From the sequence record JN849462.1: a stretch of 64,000 nt of DNA. One strand, written 5' to 3'. A program made the translations under genes and the position numbers. Below are positions 44,947 to 58,920 of the stretch, in pieces (position 1 is the first letter of the stretch; every line of letters begins with the position of its first letter). Below the pieces are notes generated by a model. It had not been told where the DNA came from, made no database searches, and saw nothing but the letters and a program-made list of their open reading frames with translations.

Positions 44947-45471
44947 CTATTTGCGCCCTTTACGATTTGCCTTATTTGCTTTTCTTTTTGCTCTACGCAA
45001 TTCTTTGCGTTTTGCGATTTTGTCTGCACGTCTAACTGCATCATAATCCGCAGCACACGACGCAGCAAACGCATCAGGCTTGAAAACGGGTTCTTGACCC
45101 ACGTATCCCAAGATAGTGCCCTTAGCTTCGTTATACGCAACGTGTGAACGATGGGATGGGTCTGGGTTGATGTCAACGTGAACTTCAAACCCACGAGTAC
45201 CACACATTGGCTTAACACGCAGGGCGGTTTCACCTGCTTTATAGACTTCATTCATCAAACGACTACGAATACCATCTTTACAAGACATGTACGCTGGTTC
45301 AGTTTCGATAGATTTGAATACTTGAGCGCCTTTACTACCCTCAAGGTGAATGATGATTACAGTAGCGTAACTAATCATATCACTCTTACGCTTGCTATCA
45401 CACCCAACATAAATCGTACTGTTCGGATGACTGTTATTGATAGCTGTTTCAATTGCTTCCCAATCGAACAT
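44947..45471 (-). CDS. RNase H-like YkuK-family protein
   Basis: IYVGCDS, EVYK, EVHVDINPD, AADY. Confidence 0.75.
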   Translation of the reverse strand: MFDWEAIETAINNSHPNSTIYVGCDSKRKSDMISYATVIIIHLEGSKGAQVFKSIETEPAYMSCKDGIRSRLMNEVYKAGETALRVKPMCGTRGFEVHVDINPDPSHRSHVAYNEAKGTILGYVGQEPVFKPDAFAASCAADYDAVRRADKIAKRKELRRAKRKANKANRKGRK

Positions 45472-45521
45472 TTTCACCTCTGTACAAAAAAGGGCAGCAC
45501 AATGCCGCCCTTATCACTTAT

Positions 45522-46958
45522 TTAAAAGCTGTAGCGATCAACGCCTACAGTTTTCAGCATGATCTTGACTGGCTCAAGCTCACCACCCAACAGTGAAGTC
45601 AGGATAGATGGGCTACAACCCGATACCAGTGCAGTACCCGCTTCGCCAGCTTTAACCGGAACGTTGCCAAGACGACCACGAATGTTCCAGAAGACCAGTT
45701 GTGGCATTTCATAGCCAGCACGTGCGTACATAGCTTTGATTGCGTCGAAGTTTGCACGTTCTCCGCGACCGTACCAGCCACCACCAGTATTTGCTTGGTC
45801 GAATTCCATGTCGCTCATGATAAGCAACTTAGTCGGCATTTCTTCTTGTGAAAGATTTGCACGTTTCGCACGTTCTAACAGAACGTTGAAGCACTTACCG
45901 ATGTTTGTGCTCATGTCTTCGCCTGATCGATTCATGTTGTCAAGACGCTCTTTTAATGAGCTACCGCGTAACTGGTGGAAGTGCGGATCGCTTGAGAACG
46001 AAATGAACTGATCTTTGAAGATGCCTTCATTGCGTTCAGCAACATAGATGCCAAGAGACATTGCAACTTGCTTACAAGTAACGCCTGAGCGGTCTGTACC
46101 TGCGTTGATTGGCGTGCTCATAGAGCCAGACACGTCAACAACTGGGATGATGCGCTCATCAGAGCCTTCCATGTAGTTCGGCAGAGCTTTCCATTGCTCG
46201 TTCGCTACAGACGCATTACCATGACTAACGCTCTTAACGACATCATATGGGAACAAAGCACCAGCGTTGATCTTCGCTTCACCTTTTTGAAGCGACTCGA
46301 TGTAGCTTGTGTAACGAGCAGAAGCGTTACGACCGAATGCTTGTTGATAACGAGCAGACGCTACAGATGGCAACTTACCGAAGTCGATTGCATCCCATTC
46401 TTGCGCACACATCTTCTGTTCAACAGTGTCAGACAAAAGTGCTAGAATCTTACGCCACTGCTTCGCAGTTACACCAAGAGACTTGATTGTGCGCTTGAAC
46501 ACATGACCGTTTTTGCTGTTCTCGCGTGGGAACCACTTCGCAGCGAGACCGTTCTTGTCATTTACAATCGCATTTGACCACAGCGTGATCGCGTCTTTTT
46601 CAAGACTTGTGCCGAAAGCAGAAATCAAGTCGTCGAAACGACCTAGTTCTGGAATTTTCGACATTACAGCACGAGCTACGTCAGGCTGCTCATTACAAAG
46701 CTTAGTGAATAGAGTACGGAAAGTACCACGTTCACCCGCACCACCGCGAACATCACGAGACCACAAAAGAATGCGTGTCGCTAGTTCTGGGTTTTCTGCA
46801 AACGCACGACCGAACAGTGTTTTAGACTGATCGTTACCACGCATAGCAGCAATACCGAAGAACAAGTTTAGACACTCGTTACCTGAAGTGCTGTGAGTAA
46901 CTGCACCGTTTGCTGTACGTGAATCGTTAGTGGTCATTGCGTTCATAAATGCTGACAT
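45522..46958 (-). CDS. TROVE/Ro60-like protein with C-terminal vWA domain (DUF2828 type)
   Basis: T.NGA, SRDVRGGAGER, GRFDDL, AAKWFPRE, KINAGALFPYD, MIDAS DVSGSM, SDMEFD, LVFWN, LVSG.SPS. Confidence 0.8.
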   Translation of the reverse strand: MSAFMNAMTTNDSRTANGAVTHSTSGNECLNLFFGIAAMRGNDQSKTLFGRAFAENPELATRILLWSRDVRGGAGERGTFRTLFTKLCNEQPDVARAVMSKIPELGRFDDLISAFGTSLEKDAITLWSNAIVNDKNGLAAKWFPRENSKNGHVFKRTIKSLGVTAKQWRKILALLSDTVEQKMCAQEWDAIDFGKLPSVASARYQQAFGRNASARYTSYIESLQKGEAKINAGALFPYDVVKSVSHGNASVANEQWKALPNYMEGSDERIIPVVDVSGSMSTPINAGTDRSGVTCKQVAMSLGIYVAERNEGIFKDQFISFSSDPHFHQLRGSSLKERLDNMNRSGEDMSTNIGKCFNVLLERAKRANLSQEEMPTKLLIMSDMEFDQANTGGGWYGRGERANFDAIKAMYARAGYEMPQLVFWNIRGRLGNVPVKAGEAGTALVSGCSPSILTSLLGGELEPVKIMLKTVGVDRYSF

Positions 46959-46992
46959 TGTTTATTCCTCATATTAAATTGCTGTAAAATGT
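46953..46992 (-). promoter_or_regulatory. putative translational operator hairpin of the TROVE-like gene
   Basis: mRNA GACAUU-UUA-CAGCAA-UUUAAU-AUGAGG-AAUAAAC-AAUGUC; GACAUU pairs with AAUGUC, which contains the AUG. Confidence 0.65.
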
Positions 46993-47007
46993 CGTTTTGA
47001 TGTGATG

Positions 47008-47037
47008 ATTATACACGGATTTGAACCTGTGTAAACA
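47008..47037 (-). promoter_or_regulatory. early promoter of the TROVE-like gene
   Basis: GTTTAC-17-TATAAT. Confidence 0.7.
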
Positions 47038-47050
47038 CTTTTTTCAATTT

Positions 47051-47365
47051 TTATCGAAAATTCATTCGAGTTAGATTCGTACCGTTTTCGTGAATCTCAA
47101 CTAGCACGCGACCGCCCGTTTCATAAGACGTTCGGAGAGAACGATAACCATGCTCTTCGAAGAATGTACGAATAATAGTCGCACCACGCTTGTCTTTATC
47201 AGCAGCGTGAATGGGCACTTTTACGATGATAGGGAAACTAGACCCTGACTCAACTGCGTGCATGAATTCTTTCTCACATTCGCTCGTGTAATGCTCGATA
47301 AGAATTCGTTTTTCTTCTGCTTCACGAGCGTGAATTTGTTGTTTGAGTTCATTATGATTAATCAT
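47051..47365 (-). CDS. hypothetical protein
   Basis: Coupled ORF. Confidence 0.55.
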   Translation of the reverse strand: MINHNELKQQIHAREAEEKRILIEHYTSECEKEFMHAVESGSSFPIIVKVPIHAADKDKRGATIIRTFFEEHGYRSLRTSYETGGRVLVEIHENGTNLTRMNFR

Positions 47366-58672: not shown

Positions 58673-58796
58673 TGGTGGAGAGTGATGGATTTGAACCACC
58701 GACCAAAAGATTTACCTAGTTATTAAGGTTTGCAGCATGAATGCTTGTCAGTATTCTTTAACATTCTTTTGCTCTACCAGACTGAGCTAACTCTCC
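58673..58796 (-). ncRNA. tRNA-shaped RNA with motif insert, anticodon undefined
   Basis: GGAGAGU/ACUCUCC-A-CCA; insert hairpin loop UGACAA followed by AUG-CUGCAA. Confidence 0.72.
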
Positions 58797-58805
58797 ATAA
58801 TTTGA

Positions 58806-58920
58806 GGGTGAAGTACAGGACTCGAACCTGCGACCTCCGGCGTGCATGTAAATGCAGAATGAAATCTTATCAGACTTCGTTTTTTGAGCCGGCATTCTAA
58901 CCAACTGAACTAACTTCACC
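58806..58920 (-). ncRNA. tRNA-shaped RNA with motif insert, no CCA
   Basis: CCGGC/GCCGG anticodon stem; GAAGUC-UGAUAA-GAUUUC followed by AUU-CUGCAU. Confidence 0.7.

What the first reader, a model, noticed from the sequence alone, without database searches (positions are those of the whole stretch)
46953..46992. The TROVE-like gene hides its own AUG in a copy of the motif (autoregulatory operator)
Seen: the leader reads GACAUU-UUA-CAGCAA-UUUAAU-AUGAGG-AAUAAAC-AAUGUC. GACAUU pairs with AAUGUC, which contains the start codon, and the Shine-Dalgarno lies in the enclosed loop. The helix is almost identical to the terminal helix of RNA A. Inference: free protein represses its own translation, and the downstream RNAs titrate it. 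This is the strongest internal link between the protein and the motif.
Basis: partly seen in the sequence, partly recalled or inferred. Interest (0 to 1): 0.8.

Follow-up and report, generated by a model that had tools for sequence, protein, structure and literature searches.

The report
Ro-like gene leader mimics partner RNAs
In a KVP40-type Vibrio phage, the start region of the mRNA for a Ro60-like RNA-binding protein holds a small, conserved copy of an RNA motif (a short end-to-end stem plus a CAGCAA box) that lies beside this protein's gene in many unrelated phages, so the protein probably shuts off its own translation when its partner RNAs are scarce; this is not proven.

Summary
On the minus strand, GACAUU (46993-46988) pairs with AAUGUC (46959-46954, containing the AUG). 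The loop holds UUA-CAGCAA and the Shine-Dalgarno sequence.

The window is Vibrio phage phi-pp2. The gene (DUF2828/DUF7788) folds like Ro60 (TROVE ring plus vWA).

The helix alone is weak (about -1 to -3.5 kcal/mol) and unremarkable by chance. It belongs, however, to a real motif family: a covarying terminal stem, a 2-4 nt linker and a CAGCAA box. At least four, probably five, ncRNAs in the upstream tRNA cluster carry it.

A covariance model built without any leader:
- ranks this leader third in the whole window, and it is the only mRNA start region hit;
- hits the leaders of seven relatives, including D479, where the 3' arm has moved onto the Shine-Dalgarno;
- finds 42 same-strand copies within 3 kb of homologous genes in 50 remote phage loci.

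Repression by the protein and titration by the RNAs are inferred, not shown. The RNAs lie upstream of the gene, not downstream. The short RNAs closely resemble Dictyostelium Class I RNAs. Some longer ones enclose a YrlA-like module.

The parts
47008..47035 (-). Sigma-70-like promoter TTTACA-16-TATAAT of the Ro-like gene
   Evidence: 11 of 12 matches. Conserved in relatives. The upstream ORF ends at 47051.
46954..46993 (-). Leader copy of the motif (M1): GACAUU / UUA / CAGCAA / 19-nt loop remainder with the Shine-Dalgarno / AAUGUC
   Evidence: Model R1 scores 17.9 bits, E 0.07, third best in the window. Orthologous leaders score 15-28 bits.
46988..46993 (-). 5' arm GACAUU
   Evidence: Invariant in eight leader variants. 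D479 has GAAAUU.
46979..46984 (-). CAGCAA box, preceded by the linker UUA (46985-46987)
   Evidence: ACAGCA is invariant in all nine aligned leaders. UUACAGCAA is also kept in the variants with the homing-endonuclease insertion.
46967..46970 (-). Shine-Dalgarno GAGG inside the loop, 8 nt before the AUG
46954..46959 (-). 3' arm AAUGUC, containing the start codon (46958-46956) and the first two bases of the Ser codon
45522..46958 (-). Gene for a 478-aa Ro60/TROVE-like protein with a vWA domain (Pfam DUF2828 + DUF7788; PHROG 850 'RNA-binding protein')
   Evidence: AlphaFold model with pLDDT 83. The top seven Foldseek PDB hits are all Ro60/TROVE, E 1e-8 to 3e-7.
45490..45512 (-). Intrinsic terminator-like hairpin after the gene
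50111..50357 (-). AAUGUCU-GU
   Evidence: Orthologues in D525, 1.081.O and nt-1 keep the stem and the box.
52386..52599 (-). M3, 214-nt ncRNA: AGACAAUA-UA-CAGCAA ... UAUUGUCU-GU
   Evidence: (z-score -2.4).
53211..53329 (-). M4, about 113-nt ncRNA: GAGUGUU-UU-CAGCAA ... AACACUC, with a T-arm-like GGGGUUCGAUUCCC
   Evidence: R1 scores 28.0 bits, E 2.7e-4.
53894..53955 (-). M5, 58-nt ncRNA: AAG-CAAUCU-UU-CAGCAA ... GGAUUG-CUGU
   Evidence: Rfam RF01414 (Dictyostelium Class I RNA) scores 27.4 bits over the full model length. Its orthologues show covarying stems.
55039..55129 (-). M6, probable member with the box variant CUGCAA: AGCUUGC-AUA-CUGCAA ... GCAAGCUGU
   Evidence: R1 scores 15.1 bits, E 0.33.

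Best explanation
The 40-nt element is a miniature copy, embedded in the mRNA, of the RNA motif that partners the DUF2828 branch of Ro60-like proteins. The motif is a 6-9 bp stem closing the RNA ends, a 2-4 nt linker and a single-stranded CAGCAA box. In KVP40-type phages the 3' strand of this stem has been placed on the ribosome-binding region of the protein's own mRNA.

Proposed mechanism:
1. The Ro-like protein recognises the stem plus the box.
2. When it is not occupied by the abundant motif RNAs made from the tRNA cluster, it clamps the otherwise marginal leader helix and blocks 30S binding.
3. When the RNAs are plentiful they compete, and translation goes on.

Shown: the motif, its conservation, its position in the start region, the Ro-like fold, and the genomic linkage of motif RNAs to this gene family. 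Inferred: binding, repression and titration.
For: 1. The motif family is real. GACAWUNUACAGCAA matches three times exactly on one strand. Terminal stems covary among paralogues and orthologues, for example M5: AGCAAUC/GAUUGCU, AGUAAUC/GAUUACU, AGAAUGU/GCAUUCU, UGGAUAC/GUAUCCA. In 20 short RNAs, 5 of 6 stem pairs show double changes, although those RNAs were picked by a descriptor that demands pairing.

2. Model R1 was built without any leader. It places the leader third of all positions in 64 kb on both strands (17.9 bits, E 0.07), and it is the only hit in an mRNA start region.

3. Leaders of seven relatives score 15.2-27.6 bits. GA.AUU..ACAGCA is the only invariant block between the -10 box and the AUG.

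4. In D479 the start is AUGAGC. The helix is re-formed as AGAAAUU/GAUUUCU over the Shine-Dalgarno/spacer, with AAG and CUG flanks (25.2 bits).

5. The strict descriptor gives 32 hits, 31 of them on the gene strand, in 63 remote homologue loci, against 0-5 for 25 permuted boxes. R1 gives 42 hits at E <= 0.05 in 50 loci, all on the gene strand. Many lie right after the stop codon or in arrays ending 14-35 nt before the start codon.

6. Cronobacter phage S13 has such RNAs within about 900 nt downstream of its homologue's stop codon.

7. The fold is Ro60-like. Ro60 proteins bind RNAs encoded next to their genes (PMC4201824; PMC12135203).

8. Some CAGCAA RNAs enclose a YrlA-like module.
Against: - No binding or expression data exist.
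- The helix is thermodynamically marginal in every phage (z-scores of 0.3 to 1.7).
- The leader arms are invariant in eight variants, so there is no classical covariation. (A)AUGUC is partly fixed by the Met-Ser coding, which is common in the family.
- The re-created D479 helix has p of about 0.06 on shuffling.
- The variants with the homing-endonuclease insertion lack the helix (6-9 bits), and so do the leaders of remote homologues and of S13. The element is therefore lineage-specific and dispensable.
- The phi-pp2 copy lacks the AAG and CUGU flanks of the free RNAs.
- Another factor could be the reader of the motif.
Confidence: 0.5

Rival explanations
1. The motif is read by a different factor. 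Candidates are a processing or modifying enzyme of the tRNA-cluster transcripts, the RNase H-like DUF458 protein encoded just downstream, a phage RNA ligase/repair protein, or a host protein. The leader copy would then couple the mRNA's fate to that factor, not to the Ro-like protein itself.
For: All motif RNAs sit among tRNAs and would need end processing. An RNase H-like gene follows the Ro-like gene. RNA ligase genes flank the cluster in relatives. In Dictyostelium the one proven direct binder of Class I RNA is an RRM protein, Rnp1A (PMC7919456).
Against: Across remote phages the constant neighbour of the motif RNAs is the DUF2828 gene. This holds by construction of the loci, but the strict same-strand bias and the tight abutment to the gene remain. 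The only mRNA start region in 64 kb that carries the motif is that of the Ro-like gene.
Confidence: 0.2
2. The leader copy acts positively or structurally. It could be a site for co-translational assembly of the RNP, a 5' stabiliser of the mRNA, or a processing site that frees a small Class I-like RNA from the leader. In none of these cases is it a repressor site.
For: The motif starts about 8 nt from the predicted 5' end. In several remote loci motif RNAs lie just upstream of the gene as separate units. The D479 copy has complete AAG/CUG flanks like a free RNA.
Against: The 3' strand always overlaps the Shine-Dalgarno or the AUG, which is the classic geometry of repression. No terminator lies between the motif and the gene.
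Confidence: 0.12
3. The leader copy is a relic without function. A duplicated 5' end of an ncRNA gene (promoter-proximal block) was captured as the leader, and the 6-bp complement to AAUGUC is chance plus coding constraint.
For: A 6-bp stem covering the AUG is common (4 of 36 genes; 4.9% of shuffles). There is no energy signal. The helix is absent from the variants with the homing-endonuclease insertion, which have an intact gene.
Against: The block is invariant while all neighbouring leader positions vary at 78-100% overall identity. The helix is re-formed at a new site in D479. UUACAGCAA is retained even after the leader was rebuilt.
Confidence: 0.1
4. A plain constitutive hairpin dampens initiation without any protein.
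For: Stem pair probabilities are about 0.5-0.85 in the model ensemble.
Against: The helix is worth only -1.2 to -3.5 kcal/mol. From established work on initiation-site structure, this is too weak to compete with 30S binding. It also does not explain the conserved CAGCAA box.
Confidence: 0.05

Closest known systems
Ro60 (TROVE) - Y RNA ribonucleoproteins, including bacterial and phage YrlA-type RNAs and Thermus phage phiLo Ro60 with Yrl1/Yrl2
   Same: The protein is a ring of HEAT-like repeats plus a vWA domain. [quoted passage not shown] A relative in phage Bas63 (gp130) was noted as Ro60-like and counters the Ppl defence system (PMC11482910).
   Different: There is no Pfam TROVE hit; the family is DUF2828/DUF7788. 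A sequence search of the PDB finds no Ro60. The RNA signature is a CAGCAA box beside the stem, not the Ro-binding bulged helix. YrlA model scores are below threshold (38-39 against 69 bits) and absent for the window's RNAs. The papers I searched describe no Ro60 autoregulation through its own mRNA.
Dictyostelium Class I RNAs (Rfam RF01414)
   Same: Length of about 56-60 nt. A 6-bp stem joins the ends and covaries, with a conserved 5' G. The RNAs start with AAG and end with CUGU. The conserved box (CC)UUACAGCAA sits directly 3' of the 5' stem strand, and the loop is A/U-rich and variable (PMC7919456). RF01414 is the top Rfam family for M5, L013 and L004, with full-length alignments.
   Different: Scores are 27-29 bits, below the gathering score of 41.5. 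The leader itself gives no RF01414 hit. The organisms are phages, not amoebae, and there is no DUSE promoter context. The known direct binder in Dictyostelium is an RRM protein. Convergence cannot be excluded.
Autogenous translational operators that mimic the protein's main RNA ligand: ribosomal proteins L1/S8/L20/S15, E. coli ThrRS, T4 gp43 and RegA, and the MS2 coat protein hairpin that contains the replicase AUG (from established knowledge)
   Same: A small RNA element in the initiation region resembles the protein's primary RNA target. The free ligand would compete with it. As in MS2, the start codon lies in the stem.
   Different: Binding and repression are untested here. The stem closes a 28-nt loop holding the Shine-Dalgarno, so it is not a compact hairpin. 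The protein family is unrelated to any of these.

Membership tests
Phage CAGCAA-box terminal-stem RNA motif (defined here, model R1) | Stem of 6 or more bp closing the element, with an outer G-C pair | tested here: met
   GACAUU/AAUGUC has 6 Watson-Crick pairs with an outer G-C.
Phage CAGCAA-box terminal-stem RNA motif (defined here, model R1) | Linker of 2-4 nt, then CAGCAA directly 3' of the 5' strand | tested here: met
   UUA-CAGCAA at 46987-46979. The box is invariant in the orthologous leaders.
Phage CAGCAA-box terminal-stem RNA motif (defined here, model R1) | Significant score with a covariance model built without the candidate | tested here: met
   17.9 bits, E 0.07 over the whole window, rank 3. 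Orthologous leaders score 15.2-27.6 bits, E 5e-5 to 0.05. E-values are rough because calibration was shortened.
Phage CAGCAA-box terminal-stem RNA motif (defined here, model R1) | AAG at the 5' flank and CUG(U) at the 3' flank | tested here: not met
   phi-pp2 has ACG ... CAGC. AAG is present in the R10Z and F86 leaders. AAG plus CUG is present in D479.
Dictyostelium Class I RNA (Rfam RF01414) | Score at or above the Rfam gathering score (41.5 bits) | tested here: not met
   Leader: no hit at E <= 10. M5 scores 27.4 bits, L013 28.9 and L004 28.2.
Dictyostelium Class I RNA (Rfam RF01414) | 6-bp terminal stem with a 5' G, an 11-nt CCUUACAGCAA-type box next to it, and a length of about 42-65 nt | tested here: met
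   The leader is 40 nt: a G-initiated 6-bp stem followed by UUACAGCAA. M5 is 58 nt with AAG ... CUGU.
Dictyostelium Class I RNA (Rfam RF01414) | DUSE promoter about 60 nt upstream; dictyostelid genome | tested here: not met
   This is a phage genome with a sigma-70-like promoter.
Y RNA / YrlA (Rfam RF02553) | Score at or above the gathering score (69 bits), with a tRNA-like domain plus a Ro-binding stem | tested here: not met
   Neither the leader nor M4 is hit. L066 and L047 RNAs reach 38-39 bits over the full model length. The window region 58771-58835 reaches 29.8 bits.
Ro60 / TROVE protein family | Ring-shaped HEAT-repeat TROVE module followed by a vWA domain | tested here: met
   The top seven Foldseek hits are Ro60/TROVE structures aligned over most of their length (509-569 alignment columns), with TM-scores of 0.5-0.6. 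The model has pLDDT 83.
Ro60 / TROVE protein family | Sequence-level match to the TROVE domain or to solved Ro60 structures | tested here: not met
   Pfam gives only DUF2828 and DUF7788. NCBIfam gives nothing. The PDB sequence search finds no Ro60.
Ro60 / TROVE protein family | vWA MIDAS motif DxSxS | tested here: met
   D275, S277 and S279 are invariant in 39 homologues.
Autogenous translational operator | The element overlaps the Shine-Dalgarno or the start codon | tested here: met
   The 3' arm lies at -1 to +5 in eight variants and at -11 to -5 in D479 (counting the A of the AUG as +1, with no position 0).
Autogenous translational operator | The element resembles the protein's main RNA ligand | tested here: inconclusive
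   It matches the motif RNAs. That these RNAs are the protein's ligands rests on gene linkage only.
Autogenous translational operator | The protein binds the element and represses translation; the free ligand relieves repression | not testable with these tools
   This needs EMSA, toeprinting and reporter assays.

The most novel reading that the evidence does not exclude
The CAGCAA-box terminal-stem RNAs are the cognate ligands of the DUF2828 branch of the Ro/TROVE superfamily. Together they form a widespread phage RNP that is distinct from Ro60-Y RNA. Dictyostelium Class I RNAs, so far thought unique to social amoebae and of unknown mechanism, are the eukaryotic members of the same RNA class. 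KVP40-type phages additionally evolved a mimic of the RNA in the protein's own mRNA as a feedback operator.
Probability: 0.25. Interest if true: 0.9.

Novelty: new variant of a known kind. Interest (0 to 1): 0.75.

Why it matters
Three things would follow if this holds.

1. It would be the first case I could find of a Ro-type protein controlling its own synthesis through an mRNA mimic of its partner RNA. This is the same logic as ribosomal-protein feedback.

2. It gives a concrete RNA ligand and a testable function to DUF2828/DUF7788. This family is present in at least 711 phage genome records, and one member has been reported to counter a bacterial defence system (PMC11482910).

3. It points to a possible molecular partner class for Dictyostelium Class I RNAs, whose mechanism has been open since their discovery.

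Even if autoregulation fails, the linkage between the motif RNAs and the gene stands as a comparative-genomic result.

Tried and rejected
1. I first took 'the motif' to be the CUGAYAAG hairpin of the expanded pseudo-tRNAs. The leader lacks it.

2. Energy-based significance of the hairpin gave nothing.

3. Exact hexamer-pair statistics were unremarkable: one match against 0.43 expected, and AUG-covering stems are common.

4. The box alone (WWACAGCAW) is not enriched in the window.

5. A loose descriptor (6 bp with G-U allowed) has a high background in AT-rich loci: a hit-to-box ratio of 0.36 against about 0.2-0.35 for controls. I replaced it with a strict descriptor.

6. Rfam on the leader gave no relevant hit. 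Rfam on M4 gave none.

7. Sequence searches for Ro60 failed with PDB phmmer and NCBIfam. Only the fold search worked.

8. Leaders of about 70 remote homologues and of Cronobacter phage S13 have no conserved hairpin that sequesters the AUG.

9. A longer alternative pairing of the 5' arm with AGUGUCU(AA) in codons 27-30 is 9 bp in D525 and 7 bp in F86. In phi-pp2 I read it by eye as 6 bp from the sequence. It is inconsistent across phages and I did not pursue it.

10. The literature held nothing functional on DUF2828, on phage Class I-like RNAs or on Ro autoregulation.

11. I could not test whether dictyostelids encode DUF2828 proteins, because no taxon-resolved protein search was on hand.
Full report
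**Identity of the window and the gene**

The window is Vibrio phage phi-pp2, a KVP40-type (Schizotequatrovirus) T4-like phage, at 100% identity. The gene in question runs on the minus strand from 46958 to 45522 and encodes 478 aa.

- It has its own sigma-70-like promoter, TTTACA-16-TATAAT, at 47035-47008, and a terminator-like hairpin at 45512-45490.
- Pfam sees only DUF2828 and DUF7788. PHROGs calls it 'RNA-binding protein'.
- Sequence searches find no Ro60.
- An AlphaFold model built on 39 homologues has pLDDT 83 and pTM 0.82. Its top seven PDB neighbours are all Ro60/TROVE structures: Xenopus Ro, Deinococcus Rsr and Thermus phage phiLo Ro60, with E 1e-8 to 3e-7 and TM-scores of 0.5-0.6.

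'TROVE-like' is therefore right at the level of fold. Homologues occur in 711 phage records, some already annotated 'Ro-like RNA binding protein'.

**The observation**

AAUGUC contains the AUG (46958-46956), and GAGG lies in the loop.

By itself this is weak evidence:
- The isolated hairpin is worth -1.2 to -2.0 kcal/mol.
- The leader MFE is -3.5 kcal/mol with a z-score of +1.0.
- A 6-bp or longer stem covering the AUG is found in 4 of 36 genes of the window and in 4.9% of shuffled leaders.

**What 'the motif' is**

GACAWUNUACAGCAA occurs three times exactly, all on the minus strand: in the leader, at 50356 and at 52598. Following these copies leads to a family of ncRNAs inside the tRNA cluster. 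Each has a terminal stem made by its two ends, a 2-4 nt linker and a CAGCAA box directly 3' of the 5' strand.

| Member | Coordinates (minus strand) | Stem and box |
|---|---|---|
| M3 | 52599-52386 | AGACAAUA/UAUUGUCU |
| M4 | 53327-53215 | GAGUGUU/AACACUC |
| M5 | 53954-53897 | AGCAAUCU/GGAUUGCU |
| M6 (probable) | 55129-55039 | box variant CUGCAA |

Orthologues in nt-1, D525, F86, 1.081.O and D479 keep the architecture while the stems covary. M5, for example, has AGCAAUC/GAUUGCU, AGUAAUC/GAUUACU, AGAAUGU/GCAUUCU and UGGAUAC/GUAUCCA.

**Is the leader a true copy?**

I built a covariance model (R1) from 20 short CAGCAA RNAs: 16 from remote metagenomic phages and four M5 orthologues, with no leader included.

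Scanning the whole window on both strands with filters off gives:
- M5, 64.8 bits (a training sequence);
- M4, 28.0 bits;
- the leader, 46995-46950, 17.9 bits, E 0.07, aligned over the full model with all six pairs.

The leader is the only hit in an mRNA start region.

Leaders of relatives also score: R10Z 27.6, D479 25.2, D525 23.0, F86 21.7, nt-1 16.6, VS2 16.0 and 1.081.O 15.2 bits.

In an alignment of nine leader variants, the only invariant block between the -10 box and the AUG is GA.AUU..ACAGCA.

**Natural variants**

- In eight variants both arms are invariant, so there is no classical covariation. The 3' arm is also partly fixed by the Met-Ser codons.
- D479 is informative. Its gene starts AUGAGC, and the helix is re-formed as AGAAAUU/GAUUUCU, with the 3' arm at -11 to -5 over the Shine-Dalgarno/spacer and with AAG and CUG flanks. 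On shuffling, such a re-created helix has p of about 0.06.
- In about 13 relatives (VH1_2019, CZ01, the D480 group) a homing-endonuclease gene sits upstream and the leader is rebuilt. The helix is gone (6-9 bits), but UUACAGCAA persists, now abutting the AUG. The helix is thus dispensable, and the box is the most persistent part.

**Link between the motif RNA and the protein**

In 63 distinct loci from IMG/VR that encode 41-54% identical homologues, each with 3 kb of flank, I ran a strict descriptor: A-G, a stem of 6 or more bp with an outer G-C, a linker, CAGCAA, the returning stem, then C-UG. It finds 32 elements, 31 of them on the gene strand. Twenty-five composition-matched permuted boxes give 0-5 each.

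R1 finds 42 hits at E <= 0.05 in 50 loci, all on the gene strand, and more than half are not training sequences. They sit immediately after the stop codon (L017, L013, L003, L010 and others) or in arrays just upstream. The last copy ends 14-35 nt before the start codon in L047, L074, L077 and L068.

Cronobacter phage S13 has two expanded tRNA-like RNAs and one CAGCAA RNA within about 900 nt downstream of its homologue's stop codon. Some longer CAGCAA RNAs enclose a module that matches the YrlA (bacterial Y RNA) model over its full length at 38-39 bits, below the gathering score of 69.

Ro60 proteins bind RNAs encoded beside them (PMC4201824; PMC12135203). The simplest reading is that the CAGCAA RNAs are this protein's ligands.

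**Mechanism proposed**

The protein recognises the stem plus the box. On its own mRNA this clamps a helix whose 3' strand lies in the 30S footprint and blocks initiation. The abundant free RNAs compete for the protein.

The steps shown are the motif, its conservation, its placement, the fold and the genomic linkage. The steps inferred are binding, repression and titration. I put this at about 0.5. The rivals are another reader of the motif (0.2), a positive or assembly role (0.12), a relic (0.1) and a plain hairpin (0.05).

**Comparison with what is known**

The logic matches autogenous operators that mimic the main ligand: ribosomal proteins, ThrRS, T4 gp43 and RegA. The MS2 coat-protein operator likewise has the AUG in the stem. 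This comparison rests on established knowledge. The RNP resembles Ro60-Y RNA in fold and gene organisation but fails sequence-level membership on both the protein and the RNA side.

Unexpectedly, the short RNAs match the published definition of Dictyostelium Class I RNAs (PMC7919456):
- length of 42-65 nt;
- a 6-bp covarying terminal stem with a conserved 5' G;
- an AAG start and a CUGU end;
- an 11-nt CCUUACAGCAA-type box next to the 5' stem strand.

RF01414 is their best Rfam family, with full-length alignments. The scores are 27-29 bits, below the gathering score of 41.5 though above the cut-off of 25 that those authors used for candidates. That paper reports the class as absent outside Dictyostelia. 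This is a resemblance, not membership, and convergence is possible.

**Caveats**

- R1 E-values are rough because calibration was shortened.
- The training RNAs were selected by a descriptor that requires pairing, so the 100% pairing is partly by construction. The permuted-box control and the non-training hits carry the weight.
- The remote loci were chosen for the gene, so only strand bias, abutment and the controls speak for linkage.
- The leaders of the KVP40 group are orthologous and count as one or two evolutionary events.

Noticed in passing
window minus strand 57114-57002, 58796-58676, 58920-58807, about 59160-59040, about 59549-59424: Five tRNA-like RNAs with intact acceptor, D and T arms. 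In each, the anticodon arm is replaced by a branched module of about 40 nt: a covarying 4-5 bp hairpin with an 8-nt loop YUGNNAAG (CUGAYAAG; AGACAU in the fifth), a 3-4 nt linker and a CNGCA(A) box. This is the same box as in the CAGCAA RNAs, but it lies 3' of a local hairpin. Three are annotated in KVP40 as tRNA-Pseudo-3, -4 and -5; two are unannotated.
   Followed up: partly
window minus strand about 57900-57640: A noncoding stretch of about 220 nt with tRNA/tmRNA-like ends (GCCGCU ... GUGUGUUCGAUUCACAC ... AGCGGCGCCA). ARAGORN and Rfam do not call it.
   Followed up: no
L087, L088, L089 (Vibrio phages VH1_2019, CZ01, D480), upstream of the homologous gene: A homing-endonuclease gene (annotated as GIY-YIG family in CZ01) is inserted on the opposite strand directly upstream of the Ro-like gene. 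It replaces the promoter and leader and changes the N-terminus to MTSLFMNAM, while UUACAGCAA is kept next to the AUG.
   Followed up: partly
L098 (Cronobacter phage S13) 3506-3626, 3636-3748, 3764-3898: Two expanded tRNA-like RNAs with GCAAA-CUGAYAAG-UUUGU-AUU-CAGCA, and one CAGCAA terminal-stem RNA, lie about 490-890 nt downstream of the stop codon of the homologous Ro-like gene, on the same strand.
   Followed up: partly
L066 2287-2399 and L047 2756-2882: Chimeric RNAs: a CAGCAA-box terminal stem enclosing a tRNA-like module that matches the Rfam YrlA model over its full length at 38-39 bits, below the gathering score of 69.
   Followed up: partly
window 44947-45477, minus strand: A 176-aa RNase H-like protein (PF04308, DUF458) is encoded directly after the Ro-like gene, behind its terminator-like hairpin. 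The pairing is conserved in KVP40.
   Followed up: no
window 46878-46867 (minus strand), codons 27-30 of the gene; D525 and F86 homologues: The leader's 5' arm can also pair with AGUGUCU(AA) inside the conserved NECLN coding block. This gives 9 bp in D525 and 7 bp in F86, and about 6 bp in phi-pp2 by my own reading of the sequence. It would enclose the whole initiation region.
   Followed up: no
L069 6755-7246: A metagenomic phage contig carries a full tmRNA gene (87 bits) within 2.5 kb of its Ro-like gene.
   Followed up: no
window 52660-52160 and 50340-50030, minus strand: The tRNA cluster holds long ORF-free stretches that carry M3 and M2. A MotA-box-like TTTGCTT, followed 14 nt later by TATGGT, precedes M3. 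M2 is followed by a terminator-like hairpin near 50095-50070.
   Followed up: no
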